Shown here in pieces: positions 1,517 to 55,193 of a DNA stretch of 64,000 bases. The translations under genes and the position numbers were made by a program. Source of the stretch: Macrostomum lignano. Lineage: Eukaryota. The notes below the pieces were generated by a model. It saw nothing but the letters and a program-made list of their open reading frames with translations. It searched no databases and had not been told where the DNA came from. Position 1 is the stretch's first letter. The number at the start of each line of letters is the position of its first letter. The DNA lies in NCBI GenBank assembly GCA_002269645.1, contig NIVC01003515.1, forward strand, positions 1 through 64,000, read 5' to 3'.

Positions 1517-3719
1517 CTGGAATGGCGCGTTTCAATTGCTGTATAAATATGTCACGCTAAAATCAAACTACTCTACTTTCAGTAGGAAGTAGTGAAGATA
1601 CTAAAGCAATTACTGCGAGCTAGTATAAAATCGATATAACTAGTTGAAAACTGACTAATAACTAAATCGAACTGCGACTTTGATGCTTCGATACAATGCT
1701 CTCATGCTAGCAGCCTAAGCTTAATACTAAGTGTAGTCAGATAAAATTGGGGCTAAATTGGAATATTGGCTAGGCCCTAGGGTTTATAATCTCTTCATTT
1801 TTGCTCTTAAGTCTAATAATAAATAAGGTTAGGGTCATTGTATACTTCCCTTATGAGTGTGTGTCTACTCAAAAAAGTCAGTGGAATAGGCAATATTGAA
1901 TTTCAGTACTTAGTAGTATAACTATACTACTACACCAATATAGAATAAGACTACTACAAGTATAGAATAAGAATACTACTAATATAGAATAGGAATACTA
2001 CTAGTAAGAAGTAAGAAATACTCAGATATGTATTTAGACTTATATTTAGAATGATTCTTAGACCTACATATAGACCTATACTCAGATCTATTCTAAGACT
2101 TTCCTAAAAATTCTATTCTAAGACTTATGCTCAGAGGTTAATTATAGTCTAATAAAACTTGGTGACAAGACAACAGTAATATTAGCAAATTGAATTTACA
2201 AGAGACAGGGGAACCATCTAGGATAACTTTGGTGGCTTAGCAGCAGAATATCTATAAAAGACAAGGGAAAGCCTTATAACAACTTTGGTGGCAGTGGCTA
2301 AGGCTAAGATTCAAAATTAGTAAAACAAAACCTTATAACAACCATGAATGCGCAATATTGGGAATCACCTGGCTGTTTCTATTGGCAACATGCACATGCA
2401 AGTTGCAAGTTGCTATTGGCTGAGAGTAGCCATGTGACTATTCTATCCAATAGTGACTTATGTGTTTGTGTGTGTGTGTTGCTATTAAAAATGGCAGAAT
2501 GAATCCCTAGGTTGCACCCAAGCATGATAACAACATGATAGAATTAATAAAACATGTTTGAATTTATTAGAAACAAAGAAAACCTTATTCATAGCTTTGA
2601 TAATTGTGGTAGGATTGATATGGCACTATTACAAATTTAGTATCAGCAATCAAATATATAAACAAAAGAGAAAACTGAAAACCTCTGGGACAACTTTGGT
2701 GTCAGCTTTTAAGGCAGAAGCATACCTTCATCACAGAAAAATTAACAAGTTTCAACAGATAGATAGTTAATTATCAAGTAGTGAAGCTAGTAAAAAGTCT
2801 TATAGATAAAAAAGCAATACTAAACAATGGTTATAAGTGCAAATAAGTAGCTAGCAATGGTTTTAATAGTGTAGTAAAACAACTAATTTGTATGACTGCT
2901 TAAGTTAAAAGTTATTATTCTACTGCTTTTGCTCTTTATTGACTTACTATTGATTAGTCAACCTACCCAAGCTAATACTAATAGTCAGATTTTGTGCCAG
3001 AAAAAATCTTTCAAGCTATATCATTCCAAACCCATTAAAATTGCAAATTTCAAGAAAATAATTATGTGAAATTAAGATTGTTTAAGAGGGATAAGCAATG
3101 CCAATTAAAAAATTGGTTAGCATTATAAACTAAGAGTATACATCTATAGCCTATAGACTTAGATATATTTATCTATATAATAAAAAGCTAGTTGATATTT
3201 GGCATACTTTTGTATTTAGTTGTGCTAAAGATTAATAGATTGAAAACACCTTGTGACTAAACAAAAATTTTTTTATTAAACTTAATCTTTACATATGAAA
3301 ATCATAACTATATAAACAGTGTTAGTATTATTTTTATTATAGTAACCATAGTCTATATATAAAAATTTAAAAGAGAAAACAATATTCTCTTCAGAAGATC
3401 TTTTATTATATCATAGAGTTAACATTTTATTATATAGGCTAAGCTAAGGTTTATGACAATAATAATAGAGGGTTTATTAGAAGTTAGAGTGTAAGGCAAT
3501 GAATGGCCTTTGATACAAGTGGCAATAGCATCATTGCTTAAAATTTCAACATACTTATTCTTTTTTCTTATGCATAATTTATGTATGCTTTTGTGAATTT
3601 TTATTTGTCAATACTAATTAGAAGGTTTAAGAGCCTAAGGCTATAGACTTAGCCACTATATACTCTTAATATTAATAACTCCCAATAGCAACTTTTATAT
3701 AGACCTATTGCCTAGGCCT

Positions 3720-4420
3720 AACACACTCCACTTGGACAGTCAAGCAGCAATCTAAGCCCTTACGCCTTAAGCGCATTATCACCTGCTTGTGAATAGTCCT
3801 TGACTATATTGGGTAGCTCAATCACTTAGGTGCCTCTAACAAGGTGTCTCTAAAGTAGACCCCTGGGCACTTAGGCCACCCCAGCAACAAGCTGGCTGAT
3901 TGCCTAGCTAAGGCTAGCTCGAATAGTACTTTTACTAGTCCCTTGCCTATGGCCCCTACCTTTATCGCCATTGTCATCACTTGGATCAACAAATGGGTAG
4001 CTTTTAAACATAAGGAGAGGTAGGCTAGGCCTAATGCCCCCAACTGCCAGCAATCTTGCATGGTTGTCCCTTAAACTTTTTTTGTCCTGTGCAGGGCCTT
4101 GCTTCGACTCAATTGCAGGGACATCAAGGCAGTAACTATGACCTTCTCAGGTCATGGCTATTTTGCTAGACATTGTCACCTTGTCACTTGGTCGCATTGT
4201 CACAATAAAGAATGCCCATTTTGCCTCTTTGGTGTCAAGAATATAGAGCATTTTATCTGTGAATATCCCACTTTTACTTAGGATAGGCTCACCTACCTTG
4301 GCCCAAACCTAAACCCAGACCTATAACATTTTTTAGGCCTAAGAATCTCTGTTAACTTATCTGCTATCTAAGGGCTACTACTACTAGGCCTAGGCCAGTG
4401 ACAATCTACCTCCTGGACTC
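3720..4420 (+). mobile_element. Heavily decayed 3' fragment of an RNase H-containing non-LTR retrotransposon (I/R1/LOA-type)
   Basis: DSQAAI*AL (3735-3761) and KVSLK*TPGHLGHPSNKLADCLAKAS (3841-3918) match the RNase H motifs DSQAAI.AL and V.L.W.PGH.G..GNE.AD.LAK.G; FSGHGYF...CPFC...KNIEHFICEYP (4144-4270) matches the ORF2 C-terminal zinc knuckle. Several stops and a frameshift. Confidence 0.8.
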
Positions 4421-6536
4421 TCCAAATGGAGGGGTACTGCACTGTGGACACTGGTACTATCAGAACTCCCTGCACTGCACCTATGTGACATTGCAGCATT
4501 AGCTGCTGATGATTGCTAGGGCTAGGGGTTAGCAAAATGGCAGCAATGCCTCCTTGCTATTTCTAGATGCACAGAGCCCCCTGCAGCTAAGTCAAAGTAA
4601 GTAGGCCTAACACAATTAGAAAGTAACTCTAACTAAGGCCTAAGGCCTAGCCTAGGTAGGAAAAATGGCCTAATGGTAATGCTGTCTTACTTTTAGTTGA
4701 TACTTAGGCCCCCCTATAATTGTAGACCTATGCTATGCCTACACTGTAAAGTCTTAGCTTAAGCCTAATTTATTTCAAATTTAATATTAATTAGGCTTAA
4801 TATAGTAGTCCTTGATTGAATAAACTATGTTATAATATTATGTACATAGATATTACTTTCTAGAGGTCGTGGTCCATTAGACCTGGGTCCATTCTGTTAA
4901 TGTAATTAATAAAGATATAAAGATTACATACGGTTACATTACATAAACTTAAAGTGCATCACCTTACAAACATGGTGCATCATCTAATCGTCTTTCAAGT
5001 AACTTTATTATTCGACAACTACAAGGTTTTTATCTGGCTACCTGAAATTTTTCTTTTAAATGTTTCCGGCATTTTAAAGTTGCGTATTTAAACCTTAACA
5101 AATTTATTACCATATACAATAACTAACCATACTGTTACCACGTCAATTTCATTTATTTGTCATCAAAAAGTGTTTATACTTGTATTCTTGTACAGGAACA
5201 ACAAATTATTCTTCTGTGAAAATCATATTGTTTACATCGATACACGAAATTGATGACATTTGACACGCATGAATCATTATTTTAACTGCCTTTTTAACTG
5301 TGCCATGTTATAGCGATAGTCGAAATCAATCCTGTTAATCTTTAGAAAGACAGGTCTCTTTAAATTAAGATGTTATTGATAAAAAAGCATTGATCTCTAA
5401 CTTTACTTTAATTTACTTTAAGCAGCTAAAGTATAATTTTATTGTTTTTCGGGTGCACAATCTTTATTTTGAAAACTTTATTCTGAATTCTAAAAGCATG
5501 AGTTAGCTTTTGAAATTTATTAAATGTGGTTGTTCAATTTTTATTAATATCTACATAAGGCGTTGTTGATCTTAGTTCTATATTTTCCCAATCGTTTGGC
5601 ATTAAAATTTGTAATTTAATCCAGAACTGAATGAAAATAATCGTAAGAATAAATTATACGCTTTACGTAGTCTGAAAAATTAAATTATTAGCTGTAATAA
5701 GAAGTCATTCAGTATCGTGCTATATTATAGCTTTTTTAAAACTAAGTTGCTATTGACGTCTTGCAGTAGTTAATGCATGGATCAGAATATATAAAAAATG
5801 GGCAGTACGTTAATCTGGTCATATATGCACCAGCTTGTTTAAAGAATTCAAAGAACCAAACTAGTATTTTAAAAACTTTCAGCCAAAAGTTTAGCGTAGA
5901 GAATGACCATCAAGCAGTAACCTAGTTTTCAGTGCTTTTTACTGAGCCTCTATAAAGTTTGACCTGGTATATTAGTTGGTTATCTCATCGCTTATTCAAT
6001 ACAGGCTAAAACACAGAAGTAAATTGGGACTCACAAAACCTACTCGATAAAGTCAAGTCTGTTTACACAGCTGCCTTCCAGCATCTTGGTCCTTCATTTT
6101 TTCATGCCTATTCCCACTTAAACAACAGTAATAAGCAGCTAGGGCGACCCCTTCCACTTGTGCTTGTGTTTACCACCCCAGCCTGTCCGCAGTTCGAAGC
6201 TTAATCTCATCCCGAGATCTGCCGCATGCCGGCCAAGCGAATGAGTGCACAGGATTGAAATGGTTTTGAAAAGTTGGAATTTTACCTGCTGCGCATTTAA
6301 CTGAAGAATTTAGCTGTAAAAAAGTTATTTGCTTCCTTGAGTGTTATTGCGTAATAACCTTAGCAGCTTGGGAGCTTGTGTTCGATTAGAGTTTACCTAT
6401 TACGATGCAATATTTTGGACCCCTTGAAGAGATTCTTCATCCTTATTTAGCCATTCTTTCGATTACAAAACATCAAGGACATCTAAACAACCAAACAGAC
6501 AGAAAATTTTTGACCCGTAGGTTCTAAAAACTGACA

Positions 6537-7541
<1,005 letters not shown>

Positions 7542-11652: not shown

Positions 11653-12003
11653 AAGGGGCGCCAGCAGCAAGGGGCGCCAGCAGCAAGGGGCGCCAGCACC
11701 AAGGAGCGCCAGCACCAAGGGGCGCCAGCACCAAGGGGCGCCAGCACCAAGGGGCGCCAGCACCAAGGGGCGCCAGCACCAAGGGGTGCCAGCACCAAGG
11801 GGCGCCAGCACCAAGGGGCGCCAGCACCAAGGGGCGCCAGTACCAAAGGGCGCCAGCACCAAGGGGCGCCAGCACCAAGGGGCGCCAGCACCAAGGGGCG
11901 CCAGCACCAAGGGGCGCCAGCACCAAGGGGCGCCAGCACCAAGGGGTGCCAGCACCAAGGGGTGCCAGCACCAAGGGGCGCCAGCACCAAGGGGCGCCAG
12001 CAT
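11653..12003. repeat. 16-bp minisatellite (AAGGGGCGCCAGCACC)n, ~22 copies
   Basis: Directly visible; explains five overlapping spurious ORFs. Confidence 0.97.
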
Positions 12004-14592: not shown

Positions 14593-16040
14593 CAGGGGCG
14601 TCGCCACCGGAGGGACAGGGGGGACATGTCCCCCCAGTAAAAGTTGTGAGGGGGACATGCCAATGCTTTGTCCCCCCCCCCAAACCTCAAGACCCGTTAT
14701 GAAAATCAATCATTTTGCTTCAAGATGACAAAATATAGTGCCTGCAGAGCTAAAATGAGTGCCTGCGGAGCTAAAATGAGTGCCTGTGGAGCTAAAATGA
14801 GTGCCTGCAGAGCTAAAATGAGTGCCTGCGGAGCTAAAATGAGTGCCTGCAGAGCTAAAATGAGTGCCTGCGGAGCTAAAATGAGTGCCTGCGGCGCTAA
14901 AATGAGTGCCTGCTGAGCTAAAATGAGTGCCTGCGGAGCTAAAATGAGTGCCTGCGGCGCTAAAATGAGTGCCTGCAGAGCTAAAATGAGTGCCTGCGGA
15001 GCTAAAATGGGTGCCTGCGGAGCTAAAATGGGTGCCTGCGGAGCTAAAATGGGTGCCTGCGGAGCTAAAATGGGTGCCTGCAGAGCTAAAATGAGTGCCT
15101 GCGGAGCTAAAATGAGTGCCTGCGGAGCTAAAATGAGTGCCTGCGGAGCTAAAATGAGTGCCTGCGGAGCTAAAATGAGTGCCTGCGGAGCTAAAATGAG
15201 TGCCTGCGGAGCTAAAATGGTGCCTGCGGAGCTAAAATGGGTGCCTGCAGAGCTAAAATGAGTGCCTGCGGAGCTAAAATGAGTGCCTGCGGAGCTAAAA
15301 TGAGTGCCTGCGGAGCTAAAATGGGTGCCTGCAGAGCTAAAATGAGTGCCTGCGGAGCTAAAATGAGTGCCTGCGGAGCTAAAATGGGTGCCTGCAGAGC
15401 TAAAATGGGTGCCTGTGGAGCTAAAATGAGTGCCTGCAGAGCTAAAATGGGTGCCTGTGGAGCTAAAATGAGCGCCTGCGGAGCTAAAATGAGTGCCTGT
15501 GGAGCTAAAATGAGTGTCTGTGGAGCTAAAATGAGTGCCTGCGGAGCTAAAATGAGTGCCTGCGGCGCTAAAATGAGTGCCTGTGGAGCTAAAATGAGTG
15601 CCTGCGGAGCTAAAATGAGTGCCTGCAGAGCTAAAATGGGTGCCTGTGGAGCTAAAATGAGCGCCTGCGGAGCTAAAATGAGTGCCTGTGGAGCTAAAAT
15701 TGGCTTTGCCTGCTAAAATGAGTGCCTGCGGAGCTAAAATGAGTCAGAGCTAAAATGAGTGCCTGGGAGCTAAAATGAGTGCCTGCGGAGCTAAAATGAG
15801 TGCCTGCAGCTAAAATGAGTGCCTGTGGAGCTAAAATGAGTGCTTGGAGCCTAAAATGAGTGCCTGTGGAGCTAAAATGAGTGCTAGCTAAATGAGTGCT
15901 GCGGAGCTAAAATGAGTGCCTGCTGGAGCAAAATGAGCGCCAACAAAACTGACAACACCGATTCTGAAAATAATGTACATGTACACGTAGAATACTTGGC
16001 TTTGTCCCCATCCACCATAAAATCCATGGCGACGTCCCTG
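14593..16040. mobile_element. Non-autonomous hAT element (MITE) carrying a 21-bp minisatellite
   Basis: Left TIR CAGGGGCGTCGCCA (14593-14606); right end TGGCGACGTCCCTG (16027-16040; 13/14 inverted match); 8-bp flanks GCAGTGAG (14585-14592) and GCAGCGAG (16041-16048). An 8-bp TSD is the hAT hallmark. Confidence 0.88.
14742..15930. repeat. 21-bp minisatellite (GAGCTAAAATGAGTGCCTGCG)n, ~56 copies
   Basis: Directly visible inside the MITE. Confidence 0.98.
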
Positions 16041-24823: not shown

Positions 24824-25594
24824 ACAACAACAACAACACAGTACGCTGCCAGATCACAAAAGCAGCGTCAGATGGCGCGCTTTAAAGCTTGGGCGCGAAC
24901 AAAAGCCGCACCGCCGGCAGAGTCCGGGGCGCCGGCGTCAGCCAGCAGACAGTCGACGTAGCGCCGAGTCCTCGCCTGTCCCCGCCGGTAGGGTGCCTGC
25001 AACGTAAGTAGCAGCACCTCCTGCACCGGCTCCGGGCAGTAGGCCTCGGCGCGGATGACGTGGCCTGCCAGCTGGAGTCGCCGACGGCGCAGCAGATCGC
25101 TAGGACGGGCCAGGCCGGCGCGATGATAGAGCGCCGTGTTGGTGACTCGCTCGTTGCCGATCTTGAAGGCGGCGCGCAGCAGGCCAGGTGCGCCGCGTCG
25201 ACTTGAGCCTCGAGCGAGTCTGTCAGCGTCCAGGTCTCGGCGTTGTATAACAGGACGGTCTCGATCACCGCCTGGAACAGCGCCGCCCTCTGGCGGTCCG
25301 GTAGGGCCTCGGACTGCAGGACTGACCTTATAGAACGAAAGGCAGCCCAAGAAAGTCCTCGGCGACGCCGCAGATCCTCGCGGACGTCGGGAACCAGACC
25401 GCCGAGGTAGACGAACTGCTGACATCTTGGAAGCTCACTCGCCTGTCCGTCAGCGCCTCGGCAGAAGATTGCAGCCTCGGTGTCGTCCGGCACGCATAGC
25501 ACGACGGTCTTCTGCGTGTTGACCACCAGGCCGACGCTCGCCGCAACGGCAACCAGCCTATCCAGCTGTCGTTGGGCGCCCTCGACGGTCGTCG
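24824..25594 (-). mobile_element. 5'-truncated RTE-like non-LTR retrotransposon (RT C-terminal region to 3' end)
   Basis: GLVVNTQKT, FVYLGG, VIETVLLYNAETWTLT, RRRRLQLAGHVIR, RRG motifs; one frameshift near 25185; (GTT)n tail at 24824-24840; CpG-rich, so probably young. Confidence 0.9.
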
Positions 25595-26043
25595 AGAGAG
25601 GGAGAGATCTCTCTTACAATACAACAGATTATGTAATATATATATATGTATCACAGTCATGATTGATTACTATGCAAAGCAATATAAATGTATATATTAT
25701 ATTCAAAATCACAATCTACTACTGCCTGGGCAGTGGGCATTCCCGTTGTCAGGTTGTCACGACAAGCACAATGAGTTCAAAATTTAAAATCAACGTTAAA
25801 TTATTTAAGCAAGTCTCAACTCTAACAACATGAGAAAACTAGACTGCTGCACTGTTGGCAACCGTGATGACATCCACGCCATGACTCCGTGATTCCCTGC
25901 AGTACCATGGAACGCCAATACTGGTAGATTGATTTCGTCTGTTGGACTCTCCAGTTCCATTTACACGGCGGGCATGACTTGTCTGTCTTAATTTAACTGC
26001 TCTGCCTGTGCCATAGACAATAGACGCTGTTTTGACTATAGAC

Positions 26044-27505: not shown

Positions 27506-30500
27506 TCAGAACTTCAGCGGCTTAGCCTGCTCCCAGGTGAACTCGTCGCGCCCGAAGTGGCCATAGCAGGAGGTCTTCTGGTAGATTGGCTTGCGCAGCT
27601 CCAGGTCCCTGTTTAATGATTTGTTATTGTTTGTAAAACATGACACACACGAACGATAAAGCAAGACAGAACGCAGTATTATTGAAAATTTGATGGCAAA
27701 GATGGGGTCTAGTATGGGGTTTTAGTCTAGTGGTTAGAGAGTGGGACACGACTGAAAGGTCGGGGGTTCGATTCTAGACCCACTCGAAGCAATTTGTGTT
27801 CTTAATCAAGACACTAATTATTGCTTAATTATTGCTAACTTACCTGACAATGCAGCCAGGCCTTAGATCGAAGTTCTCCTCAACGATGCGCAGCAGTTCT
27901 TCATCTGATCGCTTGCCAGTGCCATAGGAGTTGAGATAGACAGCCAGCGGCTTGCTCACACCGATAGCGTAGCTCACCTGCACTAATACGCGACGGCACA
28001 GGCCAGATTTCACCAGGGACTTGGCTACCCATCGGGCGGCATAGGCGGCAGATCTGTCCACTTTGCTGAAATCTTTGCCAGAGAATGCGCCGCCACCGTG
28101 GGCGCCCCAGCCGCCGTAGGTGTCAACGATGATTTTTCGGCCAGTCAGGCCGGCGTCCGACTGCGGGCCGCCAATAACGAAGCGGCCAGACGGGTTCAGG
28201 TGATAAATAGTATTCTCATCTAGCATGTCGCTGGGGCAGACGGCTTTAACAACGTGGTCCATGACGTCTTTGCGCAGCTGCTCCTGGGTGACGCTCTCGT
28301 CGTGCTGAGTGCTAACAACAATGGTGTGAATGCGAAGCGGCACACAGGCGCCGTTCTCGTCTTTGTACTCCACTGTCACCTGCGAGCGATGGGAATGATT
28401 TTATGAGTCAAGTAGATAGGCTATATTGAAAATAAAAAAATCAGAATAGACAACATGCAATAAGACTAAGATTAAGAGATTAAGATGCGCAAACAACCAT
28501 GATAAATAATTTTAACTGTTTTTATCAGAGGCTGGAGCTGTGTACACCTTGGCACACTTCAAACCAAGGCCAAGGTGTACACACACCTTCACACCTTGGC
28601 ACACACCTTGGCACACTTCAAACCACATTGTCAGAATCGGTGAGAGGCATTACTGTCCATTCTTCCGCCGACTCACCTGAGCAGGGGATACGTATGCAGT
28701 CATACACACAGGCACACACTCACACAGGAGTGTACAGCGCGGCCCTGATTCCTGATTTATCGTTAGGAACGACTTTACTGTGCCTAAAGAGCAGCTGCAC
28801 GAGCAGACCCAAGCCGAGATTCCAATTCAGCCCCAAATTAATGTGGACGGCACTGGGAATCGAGCCTGGGCCGCTGGCACATCAGAGCGAGCGACGCGCT
28901 GGGAAACTGGGCTACGACCCCCCATCATTATCCCTGATATCAGTATCTTTCAATTAAGCCAGCCCCTAATCCTACCTGAGTCTTGGTGTCTGGCCTGAGC
29001 CAGGGCAGGGTGCCATCGCGCCTGCACTGGGCCAGCTGTGCATTGAGCTTGTGCGCTAGCACAATAGTCAGGGGCATGCACTCCACAGTTTCGTCAGTGG
29101 CATAGCCAAACATAAGGCCCTGGTCGCCAGCTCCAATGTCATCCTCAGATCGAGCCTCGTGAACTCCTTGGGCAATGTCAGGGCTCTGCTCCTCGAGTGC
29201 TACCAGCACATTGCAAGTCTTGTAGTCAAATCCCTTATTAGAGTCGTCATATCCAATGTCTTTGATGGTGCCGCGGATCACACGCTGATAGTCAACGACA
29301 GCTTTAGAAGTGATCTCGCCACCAACCAAAATCATGCCAGTCTTGGTGAAGCATTCGCAGGCCACTTTGGCATTGGGGTCCTGCTTCAGATGGGCATCGA
29401 GCACTGCATCGCTGACCTGGTCGCAGATCTTATCTAGAATTTAAAGCAGAGTAAAGTATTAAATAATAAATTTGTACAAGTAATGCATTGCTGAACCCAT
29501 TGGGTCTAAAAAGTAGAATAGACTATGCCACACTTTATGGAATAAATTTATCATTGTCTACTACGAGATAAATGATGTCTACTACGTCTACTAGATGTCT
29601 AGATACTAGATGATAGTAGATGTCTAGTAGATACTAGATGATAGATACTAGATGTCTACTACGATCTCATATAAGTAGAATAGAATCTTAATCTCACCTC
29701 ATCTAAAAAATCTTGACCTGGCCTAAGCTTTCTGTTTAATCAAATAATGGCATTGATCCAAGTTCTCCTCCATAGTCAAGATTATAGTATACATGTCCCA
29801 AATATATTTAAGACAAAAAACTTTCTGCCTTGATTCCTTCCCTGAGACTCAAAATCTGTCCTAATGCCCTGAAGTAGTCTTAATTTCTACCCTGAGCCTC
29901 AGGTCCATCTAATTCAATCATTTAATTGTTTTATTTAGATGGTTAGATCTACATGGCCATATTAGCCACTAAATAGGCAATATAGCTCAGCCTATAGTCT
30001 GGAAGGTGGCCTTTATACTGGAATTTTCTAGTATATTTTTGCTCTCACTGACAATCTTAGCATACACTTAGCATATAGAATTTTCAGGTTTAACATAAAG
30101 TGTACATAGTTGGCATATAAAAAATAGCCAAGTTCAAGGCTAATGTAATCATGTAATTAAATATCAACCAATGTTGAAAGCTCCTTAAAAATAATTGGAA
30201 ACTAAAATAGAAAATAATAAGCAATCATGAGAAAGTCAAAATAAAAAAGAATATTAGTTTTAAGCAAAAAAACTGCCATTTTAAAGCTTAGTAAAAGTTT
30301 TGAATTCCTAAAAATATATATTCTTAAAAAATGGCATATAGACAATTCTAGCCTTGGCATTAAATTTTTTTAATTTTGCATTGGCATTAAATTGAAAAAA
30401 AACATGAATTTCTTTTCCAGCATATGCCTGCCATGATCTAGACTATAGAGCTTAACTTTAGTATGCTAGTTAACCATTTTGCTGCTATCTATTACACTTT

Positions 30501-31076
30501 GTCCCTGACCTAGCTTTACTTGCCTTACTTTGCTCTGCCCCAGGGTAAATTTACCCTGAATTTTCAATGAAAAATAGCCATATTCTTGACTATGGGTTTT
30601 CTTATCTTAAACTTAAAGTTAATAAATTCCATTAAAATTGAAGAAAAAAATTGATATTGTCATTTTTAAACTAAACAGACTAACAAAATACTTTTTAGAT
30701 TCAAAAAAATTTAGCTGAAAATGTCAAGACAGAGGAATTAGTCTAGTAGTAGAAGGGTCTAGAAATAAATAAAATAAAAACCCATTAAAAGCCTTAGTGA
30801 TTAACTACTGTACATCAAGGACAGAGGTCAGTCAAACGTAGATAAAAAGAGACATAGCCTAGGCTTTGCCGCTTACAGGCTAATTTAAGAAATTTAGGAA
30901 ATATTCTAGAATACCATTATTTGACGGCTTGAAGTCAATAAATTGCAATAGGACTACAGATTAAATGGTATTCCATGCCTTGTTTCATTTTTAATTTATC
31001 AGAGCTTACCAGGATGTCCTTCGCCCACAGATTCGGATGTGAAAAGAAATGTTTTGAGACCTTCTCCGTTCGCCAT
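27506..31076 (-). CDS. MAT: S-adenosylmethionine synthetase (methionine adenosyltransferase), 387 aa, 4 exons
   Basis: Exons 31076-31010, 29433-28976, 28379-27844, 27608-27506 join in phase (1164 nt). Motifs [49 protein letters not shown]. Confidence 0.98.
27716..27825 (+). mobile_element. Truncated copy of SINE family A in MAT intron 3
   Basis: tagtggttagag...gactgaaaggtcgggggttcgattctagaccc matches 23996-24052. Confidence 0.8.
28796..28922 (-). mobile_element. tRNA-derived SINE family B in MAT intron 2
   Basis: Minus strand GGGGTCGTAGCCCAGT...GGCTCGATTCCCAGTG (A- and B-box-like); body shared with 10602-10700. Confidence 0.7.

Positions 31077-32425: not shown

Positions 32426-55193
<22,768 letters not shown>

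What the first reader, a model, noticed from the sequence alone, without database searches (positions are those of the whole stretch)
3720..4420. RIP-like CpA/TpG->TpA hypermutation recorded in the codons of a LINE fragment
Seen: against conserved RNase H and zinc-knuckle motifs, nearly every lesion is a C:G->T:A transition. Non-CpG context: W->TAG (TGG; 3856), probable Q->TAG (3814) and Q->TAA (3753), C->Y (TGT->TAT; 3805 and in CEYP), G->S (gct-GGC->gct-AGC; 3916). CpG context: GNE->SNK (ccc-GGC->AGC, aac-GAG->AAG), S->L (TCG->TTG) in SDSQ. Established: CpA->TpA mutation is the signature of fungal repeat-induced point mutation, whereas ordinary animal 5mC decay gives mainly CpG->TpG/CpA. Inference: this animal may have a repeat- or domain-targeted process that also hits CpA (heavy non-CpG methylation or a deaminase). 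I know of no description of this in flatworms. Ancestral codons are inferred from motif consensus, not from an alignment. The nearby RTE, Penelope and Crypton copies are unaffected.
Basis: partly seen in the sequence, partly recalled or inferred. Interest (0 to 1): 0.78.

Follow-up and report, generated by a model that had tools for sequence, protein, structure and literature searches.

The report
Methylation-type decay of a flatworm LINE
An old, broken copy of a Macrostomum-type jumping gene has lost almost all its CpG sites and about 40% of its CpA/TpG sites to C-to-T changes on both strands. This fits slow decay of methylated DNA better than a fungal-style repeat-killing system, and the CpA part is a testable hint of non-CpG methylation in a flatworm.

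Summary
Window 3726-4601 (+) is a 5'-truncated LINE 3' end (RNase H C-terminus, Cys/His knuckle, stop, 3'UTR), bracketed by a 13-bp target-site duplication. It belongs to a Macrostomum lignano family.

Ancestral states were inferred from intact relatives. At codon positions 1-2 there are 72 C:G>T:A transitions, 4 reverse transitions and 18 transversions.

Context hierarchy:
- CpG: 50 of 53 sites lost.
- CpA/TpG: about 41% changed, equal on both strands.
- CpT and CpC: 11-19% changed.

CpA versus other non-CpG contexts gives OR 3.0 (p=1.5e-5) in the pairwise alignment and OR 5.4 (p=0.002) in the polarised codon test. It also holds at third positions plus UTR (p=0.02).

The RIP reading is not supported:
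- CpG dominates, and the composite RIP index fails.
- The copy carries transversions and indels that indicate age.
- It lies inside a 3.2-kb CpG-free block that extends beyond the element.
- Similar CpG-free blocks, in which CpG is hypermutable, occur in M. lignano loci.

APOBEC-type cDNA editing is excluded: the changes are strand-symmetric, show no strand runs and no 5' preference.

Best reading: deamination of 5mC laid down at CpG and, less often, at CpA (DNMT3-like). This is single-locus evidence, and repeat targeting could not be tested.

The parts
3726..4601 (+). 5'-truncated, decayed copy of an RNase H-bearing LINE of a Macrostomum lignano family. It holds the end of ORF2 and the 3'UTR.
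   Evidence: 66% nucleotide identity to L001:1684-2507 over 887 columns. It shares M. lignano-specific residues wherever P0007 differs from P0008/P0003/P0005. The reading needs at least two frames and is broken by about eleven stop codons.
3713..3725 (+). Upstream copy of the probable target-site duplication TAGGCCTAACACA.
   Evidence: Exact 13-bp direct repeat at the two ends of the homology to L001.
4602..4614 (+). Downstream copy of the probable target-site duplication TAGGCCTAACACA.
   Evidence: It starts exactly where homology to L001 ends, after ...GTCAAAGTAAG.
3726..3930 (+). RNase H C-terminal half (the HxDSQAA motif and WIPGHxGxxGNExAD-LAK) with stops at 3753, 3790, 3814 and 3856.
   Evidence: Weak Pfam RNase_H match on the decayed translation (E 0.063); strong match in relative P0007 (5.6e-16); codon table.
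4213..4266 (+). Cys/His knuckle C-x2-C-x8-H-x2-C-x-C. The last Cys (4264) is mutated to Tyr.
   Evidence: These columns are invariant among the relatives; codon table.
4500..4502 (+). Position of the ancestral ORF2 stop codon (TAG). The 3'UTR runs from 4503 to 4601 and includes a fully conserved stretch, CCCTGCAGCTAAGTCAAAGTAAGT, at its end.
   Evidence: Alignment A1, columns 801-904; P0007 ends at residue 592.
1690..4868 (.). Sharply bounded CpG-free, AT-rich block that contains the LINE copy.
   Evidence: 7 CpG observed against 95 expected (P=6e-32). The flanks are normal: 64 against 63, and 35 against 45.
29662..30837 (.). Second CpG-free block of the same kind, upstream of a SAM-synthetase gene. 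It shows no TpA excess.
   Evidence: 1 CpG observed against 27 expected; composition; gene identified.

Best explanation
This is an old, dead, 5'-truncated LINE copy. It inserted (a target-site duplication is present) into a stretch of intergenic DNA that was already AT-rich and CpG-free. It then decayed in place by cytosine-to-thymine changes on both strands.

The context hierarchy is CpG (almost all lost), then CpA/TpG (about 40%), then CpT, then CpC at or below that. This is the hierarchy expected from spontaneous deamination of 5-methylcytosine laid down by DNMT1/DNMT3-type enzymes, which methylate CpG fully and CpA more often than CpT or CpC.

T:G mismatches outside or inside CpG would be poorly repaired if, as reported for flatworms, there is no MBD4-type glycosylase.

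Shown here: the element, its family, the polarised mutation spectrum, the context dependence, the strand symmetry, the block structure, and CpG hypermutability confined to CpG-poor DNA in M. lignano.

Inferred, not shown: that methylation is the cause, that CpA is methylated, and that weak repair contributes.
For: Spectrum. At polarised codon positions 1-2: C>T 39, G>A 33, T>C 3, A>G 1, transversions 18.

Context:
- CpG 51/105 per strand; 50 of 53 CpG gone, with outcomes TG 20, CA 14, TA 8.
- CpA/TpG 46/112; CpC 27/148; CpT 23/118.
- Codon test: CpA/TpG 12/29, ApG/CpT 5/30, CpC/GpG 2/31.

Strand behaviour:
- Symmetry holds: CpA 26/63 versus TpG 20/49, and C>T versus G>A p=0.11-0.58.
- There are no strand-coordinated runs (z=0.45), and density is even along the copy.

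Regional character:
- The 3.2-kb block has 7 CpG against 95 expected and normal flanks.
- The target-site duplication shows a pre-existing TpA-rich target.

Genome-level support, from M. lignano homeologous loci L004/L005:
- They show the same mosaic of CpG-free blocks.
- CpG is hypermutable only in the CpG-poor stratum (6/9 versus 136/1785, p=1.5e-5). It is not hypermutable in the CpG-normal stratum (p=0.45).
- On the transversion clock from those loci, CpG and CpC changes in the LINE are as expected. CpA is in excess: 12 observed against 2.1-4.0 expected, p=2e-6 to 9e-4.

Literature:
- M. lignano keeps DNMT1 and DNMT3 and has low-level 5mC (PMC11292947, PMC9246332, PMC10658182).
- Platyhelminths have a single MBD2/3 and no MBD4-type glycosylase (PMC3710501).
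- An MBD4-null macaque transmits excess C>T at CpG and at CpA, attributed to DNMT3A CpA methylation in oocytes (PMC10760519).
Against: - No methylation data exist for this locus. The genome-wide methylation pattern of free-living flatworms is stated to be unknown (PMC9246332).
- In the M. lignano homeolog comparison, CpA is only about 1.45-fold above CpC+CpT in CpG-poor DNA (p=0.045) and equals CpC. A standing regional CpA regime as strong as in the LINE is therefore not seen.
- The second CpG-free block shows no TpA excess (odds ratio 1.06 against 1.66 for block 1).
- CpA/TpG are not depleted in the block (o/e about 1.0).
- The evidence rests on one 0.9-kb copy.
- The window's species is not proven to be M. 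lignano. Its GH47 is only 47% identical to the best M. lignano protein.
- No CAC or CAG sub-preference of the kind known for DNMT3A/3B is visible.
Confidence: 0.5

Rival explanations
1. A RIP-like, homology-dependent genome defence. Repeated DNA would be recognised in the germline and hit by a DNMT-like or deaminase activity that converts C to T at CpA and CpG on both strands, in bursts.
For: - C:G>T:A makes up 77% of polarised changes, and both strands are hit.
- The order CpA > CpT > CpC mirrors the Neurospora preference. CpG-directed RIP-like patterns (TpCpG) are known in Pucciniomycotina (PMC3318451), and here YCG 37/56 exceeds RCG 14/49.
- TpA/ApT rises from 0.89 in L001 to 1.34.
- The CpA excess is stronger in the TE copy than in background CpG-poor DNA.
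Against: - (CpA+TpG)/(ApC+GpT) is 1.44, which fails the RIP criterion.
- ts/tv is about 4, with 4% transversions and 10 indels. That fits an age about three times the per-lineage homeolog divergence, so no burst is needed.
- The CpG-free tract is 3.6 times longer than the element and pre-dates it, as the target-site duplication shows.
- Similar tracts lie beside single-copy genes.
- RIP is known only in fungi (PMC9246332, PMC12543289).
- No second copy is available to show that both copies are mutated.
Confidence: 0.07
2. Ordinary neutral decay with no role for non-CpG methylation. The copy is simply old, mutation is AT-biased, and CpG is hypermutable. The CpA excess would be either a general neighbour effect on transitions at YpA/TpR steps or a sampling fluctuation in one short copy.
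For: - The copy is old by transversions and indels.
- Non-CpG, non-CpA C>T and T>C rates match the homeolog-derived background.
- In the unpolarised comparison, T>C at TpA is also about twice that in other contexts (10/47 versus 28/273), which suggests a two-way YpA effect.
- The homeolog test gives a mild CpA elevation of 1.45-fold.
- CpA/TpG are not depleted at apparent equilibrium in the block.
Against: - CpA events are 12 against 2.1-4.0 expected on the transversion clock (p at most 9e-4).
- The effect appears in three partly independent site classes: codon positions 1-2 polarised, third positions plus UTR, and both strands.
- The CpG-normal stratum of M. lignano shows no CpA excess (7/531).
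Confidence: 0.22
3. Enzymatic cytosine deamination (an AID/APOBEC-like or other deaminase). It would act either on LINE RNA or cDNA during retrotransposition, or on the integrated copy.
For: There is a large excess of C>T and G>A. The CpA excess is stronger in the element than in background DNA, as editing before integration would give.
Against: - There is no strand asymmetry (92/279 versus 57/218, p=0.11) and no strand-coordinated runs (z=0.45).
- There is no 5' TC/CC preference at CpA sites (ACA 0.45, CCA 0.41, GCA 0.33, TCA 0.53). G>A shows no GG/GA preference either.
- The determinant is the 3' base, which is the DNMT pattern, not the APOBEC pattern.
- The flanks are CpG-free too.
Confidence: 0.06

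Closest known systems
Deamination decay of germline-methylated transposons (5mC at CpG > TpG/CpA), as in vertebrates and mosaic-methylated invertebrates
   Same: Near-total CpG loss with TpG/CpA products. Both strands are affected. The CpG-poor domain is regionally bounded. CpG is hypermutable only in CpG-poor DNA of M. lignano.
   Different: There is an added CpA/TpG>TpA component of about 40% of sites. It is not a usual feature of invertebrate methylation footprints. No methylome is available for this animal's germline.
CpG plus CpA C>T germline signature of MBD4 loss in a macaque, attributed to DNMT3A CpA methylation in oocytes (PMC10760519)
   Same: The same two contexts are affected, with CpG ahead of CpA. 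Both involve an animal germline. Flatworms are reported to lack an MBD4-type glycosylase (PMC3710501).
   Different: The macaque case is a measured de novo spectrum in a mutant. Here the spectrum is inferred from one fossil element, and neither mCpA nor the repair gene content was tested.
Fungal repeat-induced point mutation (Neurospora CpA type; Pucciniomycotina TpCpG type, PMC3318451, PMC12543289)
   Same: C:G>T:A on both strands of a transposon. The order is CpA > CpT > CpC, and YCG is preferred over RCG.
   Different: CpG dominates and the composite RIP index fails. Many transversions and indels are present. The mutated tract is larger and older than the repeat. No evidence exists for homology dependence or for a RID-type enzyme. 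This is an animal.
APOBEC3-type editing of retroelement cDNA
   Same: Hypermutated retroelement copy with many G>A changes that create stops, such as TGG>TAG.
   Different: The changes are strand-symmetric, lack a 5' dinucleotide signature, are not clustered, and depend on the 3' base.

Membership tests
Non-LTR retrotransposon (LINE) with RNase H, Macrostomum lignano family | Homology to ORF2 RNase H, C-terminal Cys/His knuckle and 3'UTR of intact family members | tested here: met
   phmmer E 3.6e-15 to 3.2e-11 to P0003-P0007. 887-column DNA alignment to L001. Family members are named M. lignano in UniRef.
Non-LTR retrotransposon (LINE) with RNase H, Macrostomum lignano family | Insertion hallmarks: 5' truncation and a target-site duplication | tested here: met
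   Homology starts inside RNase H at about 3720. An exact 13-bp repeat lies at both ends. The 3' tail type and the LINE clade were not determined.
Fungal-type RIP | C:G>T:A transitions overwhelmingly dominant | tested here: inconclusive
   77% of polarised changes, ts/tv 4.2. This is strong bias, but far from the near-exclusive transitions of fresh RIP. The copy is old.
Fungal-type RIP | RIP indices: TpA/ApT at least 0.89 and (CpA+TpG)/(ApC+GpT) at most 1.03 | tested here: not met
   The values are 1.34 and 1.44 for 3720-4603. Only the 265-bp tail 4604-4868 meets both (1.67, 0.72).
Fungal-type RIP | CpA is the preferred target | tested here: not met
   CpG 49% per strand (94% of sites lost) is at or above CpA 41%.
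Fungal-type RIP | Restricted to duplicated sequence, with all copies mutated | not testable with these tools
   There is no second copy in the window, none in 43 kb of M. lignano DNA and none in the metagenome scans. The CpG-free tract exceeds the element, which argues against this feature.
Fungal-type RIP | RID/Masc1-type methyltransferase present | not tested
The literature reports only DNMT1, DNMT2 and DNMT3 for M. lignano.
5mC deamination decay of methylated DNA | CpG loss to TpG/CpA on both strands, with regional CpG depletion | tested here: met
   3 of 53 CpG survive, with outcomes TG 20, CA 14, TA 8. Block CpG o/e is 0.07.
5mC deamination decay of methylated DNA | Organism has DNMT1/DNMT3 and 5mC | not testable with these tools
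   This is reported for M. lignano in reviews that cite Wasik 2015 (PMC11292947, PMC9246332). The primary paper is not held, and the species of the window is not proven.
5mC deamination decay of methylated DNA | The locus is methylated, including at CpA, in the germline | not testable with these tools
   This needs a methylome.
APOBEC-type cDNA editing | Plus-strand G>A excess, 5' dinucleotide signature, clustered strand-coordinated runs | tested here: not met
   C>T 92 versus G>A 57. Runs z=0.45. No GG/GA or TC/CC preference.

The most novel reading that the evidence does not exclude
Macrostomum has a transposon- or domain-directed cytosine methylation system with substantial CpA activity in the germline. 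Without MBD4-type repair, this system mutagenises new insertions at CpG and CpA. It would be an animal analogue of RIP in outcome (mutational inactivation of repeats), though driven by DNMT3-type methylation rather than by homology sensing.
Probability: 0.15. Interest if true: 0.8.

Novelty: new variant of a known kind. Interest (0 to 1): 0.45.

Why it matters
The genome-wide methylation pattern of free-living flatworms is stated to be unknown, although M. lignano keeps DNMT1 and DNMT3.

This locus, together with the M. lignano loci fetched here, indicates a sharply mosaic genome. CpG-free blocks, in which CpG is hypermutable, alternate with DNA of normal CpG content that includes exons. This is the reverse of the usual invertebrate gene-body pattern.

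A CpA component would mean germline non-CpG methylation outside vertebrates. It would also mean that methylation acts as a mutagen that permanently disables transposons.

All of this can be tested directly with one methylome and a genome-wide analysis of TE copies against their consensus.

If the CpA excess does not replicate, the finding reduces to ordinary decay of a methylated pseudogene.

Tried and rejected
- Word-indexed protein search with the decayed translation: no hit.
The 68-aa stop-free knuckle stretch worked.
- P0002, the second-best hit, is a bacterial repeat protein on a bacterial contig and is spurious.
- DNA for the M. lignano UniRef models P0003, P0005 and P0028 is not on record. 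M. lignano could therefore be used only at protein level.
- Both metagenome scans, by protein alignment and by the conserved 3'UTR 22-mer, found nothing.
- There is no second copy of the family in the window or in 43 kb of M. lignano DNA.
- A six-frame comparison of the rest of the block and of block 2 against the window found nothing. What the non-LINE part of the block derives from remains unknown.
- Repeats within the window are tandem arrays and are unusable for a context test.
- A CHG/CWG (plant-like) reading was considered because CAG/CTG is depleted and TAG/CTA enriched in the block. It was rejected: CAA, CAC, CAG and CAT are hit equally (0.38-0.50). The CTG signal is confounded by synonymous Leu CTG/TTG changes.
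- A Dcm-like CCWGG reading was not pursued for the same reason.
- Compositional scans of TpA versus CpA across 1-kb windows were not decisive. CpG-poor windows average higher, but some AT-rich windows with normal CpG score as high.
- Lookup of a window ORF to identify the source record failed.
- The Wasik 2015 paper is not held.
Pfam scans of ORFs found host genes only: GH47, a C2H2 zinc finger, SAM synthetase and PMM.

Full report
**What is there**

Reading 3600-4700 in three frames shows a decayed reading frame on the + strand. It carries the end of an RNase H domain (HLDSQAAI......TPGHLGHPSNKLADCLAKA) and a Cys/His knuckle (CPFC...EHFICEYP). It is broken by one frameshift and about eleven stops. 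Pfam sees only a weak RNase_H tail (E 0.063).

A word-indexed search with the decayed translation found nothing. A full HMMER scan with the 68-aa stop-free knuckle stretch found 24 relatives. The Macrostomum lignano UniRef models among them are chimeric gene models that include LINE-derived pieces. One relative is an intact 592-aa protein, P0007, on a metagenome contig, L001. P0007 has a clear RNase H domain.

The window aligns to L001 over 887 columns at 66% identity, from about 3720 to 4601. The alignment runs through the ancestral stop (4500-4502) and a 3'UTR whose last 24 nt are identical.

An exact 13-bp direct repeat, TAGGCCTAACACA, sits at 3713-3725 and 4602-4614, at the two ends of the homology. 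I read it as the target-site duplication of a 5'-truncated LINE insertion.

Wherever P0007 differs from the M. lignano proteins (P0008, P0003, P0004, P0005, P0028), the window copy agrees with M. lignano. The copy therefore belongs to the M. lignano family. The species itself is not proven: the window's GH47 gene is only 47% identical to the best M. lignano GH47.

**The mutation spectrum**

With L001 as a stand-in for the ancestor, the difference matrix is C>T 92, G>A 57, T>C 25, A>G 13 and 65 transversions.

By context, both strands folded:

| Context | Changed / sites | Fraction |
|---|---|---|
| CpG | 51/105 | 49% (only 3 of 53 CpG survive; outcomes TG 20, CA 14, TA 8) |
| CpA/TpG | 46/112 | 41% |
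| CpC | 27/148 | 18% |
| CpT | 23/118 | 19% |

- CpA against CpC+CpT gives OR 3.0, p=1.5e-5. With the neighbouring base unchanged, it is 31/84 against 28/179, p=2e-4.
- The two strands are equal (26/63 and 20/49).
- No sub-preference appears among CAA, CAC, CAG and CAT, and no 5' preference at CpA.

L001 is a relative, not the ancestor, so I polarised with proteins. I took codons where the M. lignano proteins and P0007 fix the ancestral amino acid. There the dinucleotide formed by codon positions 1-2 is known.

At 434 such sites the changes are C>T 39, G>A 33, T>C 3, A>G 1 and 18 transversions:

| Class (codons) | Changed / sites |
|---|---|
| CpA/TpG (His, Gln, Cys, Trp) | 12/29 |
| CpT/ApG | 5/30 |
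| CpC/GpG | 2/31 |
| CpG (Arg) | 10/26 per strand |

CpA/TpG against the other non-CpG classes gives OR 5.4, p=0.002.

Two cautions apply to this test.
Only the tests with denominators count.
Without them it is 7/24 against 7/61, p=0.059.

I conclude that the CpA/TpG excess in this copy is real, at about 2- to 4-fold over other non-CpG contexts.

**What it is not**

*cDNA editing of the APOBEC kind is excluded.*
- C>T and G>A are equally frequent per site (p=0.11 pairwise, 0.58 polarised).
- Their order along the copy shows no strand runs (74 runs against 71.4 expected).
- The determinant is the 3' base, not the 5' base.

*Classical RIP membership fails.*
- CpG, not CpA, is the main target.
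- (CpA+TpG)/(ApC+GpT) is 1.44.
- The copy has about 4% transversions and ten indels. Several are small tandem duplications.

*The mutated state is not confined to the element.*
- It lies in a block, 1690-4868, with 7 CpG where 95 are expected. The flanks are normal (64 against 63, and 35 against 45).
- The identical target-site duplication halves show that the target was already TpA-rich when the LINE arrived.
- A second CpG-free block (29662-30837, 1 CpG against 27 expected) lies upstream of a SAM-synthetase gene.

**Background from M. lignano**

Two homeologous M. lignano loci (L004 and L005, 93% identical) contain no copy of the family. They show the same mosaic of CpG-free and CpG-normal kilobase blocks.

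Differences between them give a present-day spectrum.

| Stratum | Transitions | Transversions | CpG behaviour |
|---|---|---|---|
| CpG-poor | 142 | 141 | Extremely mutable (6/9 against 136/1785, p=1.5e-5) |
| CpG-normal | 45 | 44 | Not hypermutable (p=0.45) |

In the CpG-poor stratum, differences per C site are CpA 0.092, CpC 0.091 and CpT 0.050.

So the genome has a compartment that behaves as methylated and one that does not. Within the methylated-like compartment, CpA is only about 1.45-fold above CpC+CpT (p=0.045).

I then scaled those rates by the LINE's transversion count:
- CpG and CpC changes in the LINE are as expected (10 against 10.8-17.1, and 2 against 2.2-4.2).
- CpA is in excess (12 against 2.1-4.0, p=2e-6 to 9e-4).
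- CpT is possibly in excess (5 against 1.2-2.3).

The copy's transversion load (4.1%) is about three times the per-lineage homeolog divergence (1.3%). It is old, and no burst is required.

**Mechanism**

The order CpG >> CpA > CpT >= CpC is the substrate order of DNMT3-type enzymes. That statement rests on established knowledge, not on a test here.

- Reviews state that M. lignano retains DNMT1 and DNMT3 and has low-level 5mC, with the pattern unknown (PMC11292947, PMC9246332, PMC10658182).
- A survey found a single MBD2/3 and no MBD4-type glycosylase in platyhelminths (PMC3710501).
- An MBD4-null macaque transmits excess C>T at CpG and at CpA, attributed to DNMT3A CpA methylation in oocytes (PMC10760519).

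The simplest account is therefore deamination of 5mC at CpG and, less often, at CpA, in a methylated domain that took in the new insertion. The stronger CpA signal in the element may reflect dense de novo methylation of a young transposon.

This is inference. No methylation data bear on the locus. Block 2 and the homeolog test show little or no CpA effect. The sample is one 0.9-kb copy.

**Verdict**

A DNA-level process that also hits CpA is likely. The 'RIP-like' label and repeat targeting are not shown, and several RIP criteria fail.
- Novelty: a variant of methylation-driven transposon decay with a non-CpG component in a flatworm.
- It is worth a genome-wide test and a methylome, but it is not established.

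Noticed in passing
window 3713-3725 and 4602-4614: An exact 13-bp direct repeat, TAGGCCTAACACA, brackets the LINE fragment. It is a probable target-site duplication. It also shows that the insertion site was already TpA-rich.
   Followed up: yes
window 29662-30837: A second CpG-free, AT-rich block (1 CpG, 27 expected) lies directly upstream of a SAM-synthetase gene on the minus strand (exons 27843-28400 and 28943-29440). The exons themselves keep normal CpG, which is the reverse of the usual invertebrate gene-body pattern.
   Followed up: partly
L004 and L005 (M. lignano NIVC01001772.1 and NIVC01000049.1): The homeologous loci are 93% identical and show the same kilobase-scale mosaic of CpG-free and CpG-normal DNA. 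CpG is hypermutable only in the CpG-poor stratum. ts/tv is about 1 in both strata, and CpG-poor DNA diverges 2.5 times faster.
   Followed up: partly
window 3726-4601 versus L001: CpG transitions depend on the 5' base: YCG 37/56 against RCG 14/49 (p=1.8e-4). Arg codons went CGN>TGN eight times and CGN>CAN twice.
   Followed up: partly
window 3726-4601 versus L001: Nine of ten indels are 4-12 bp extra in the window copy. Several are small tandem duplications (GCTAGG twice, CTA three times, TAGGC twice). Some may be subfamily differences rather than insertions.
   Followed up: no
window 3714-4643: AGGCCT is clustered: 7 of the 16 sites in the window lie here. The internal TAGGCCTAAG at 4334 corresponds to CAGGCCCGAG in L001, so transitions can create this motif repeatedly.
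   Followed up: partly
window 4604-4868: The 265-bp non-LINE tail of the block is the only stretch that meets both classical RIP indices (TpA/ApT 1.67, (CpA+TpG)/(ApC+GpT) 0.72). It is too short to interpret.
   Followed up: no
window 48744-50483 and 51880-52860: A GH47 alpha-mannosidase gene lies in two long ORFs separated by a microsatellite-rich stretch. It is only 46-47% identical to the two best M. lignano GH47 proteins. The window is therefore either another Macrostomum species or an unannotated paralogue.
   Followed up: partly
window 6537-7541, 11653-12000, 14737-15941, 36355-38112: Very long microsatellite and satellite arrays are present, including (GTCT)n of 1 kb, a 16-bp satellite, and a roughly 21/63-bp array found in both orientations at two places. 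They produce many spurious long ORFs.
   Followed up: no
window 24885-25613 (-): An open 243-aa ORF with a reverse-transcriptase-like motif (...GLVVNTQKTVVL...) lies in DNA with CpG o/e about 1. Pfam gave no hit at E below 0.01.
   Followed up: partly
L001 and L002 (JGI metagenomes 3300038379 and 3300037309): Intact relatives of a Macrostomum LINE family turn up on short contigs of environmental metagenomes. This suggests that macrostomid or related flatworm DNA is present in those samples.
   Followed up: no
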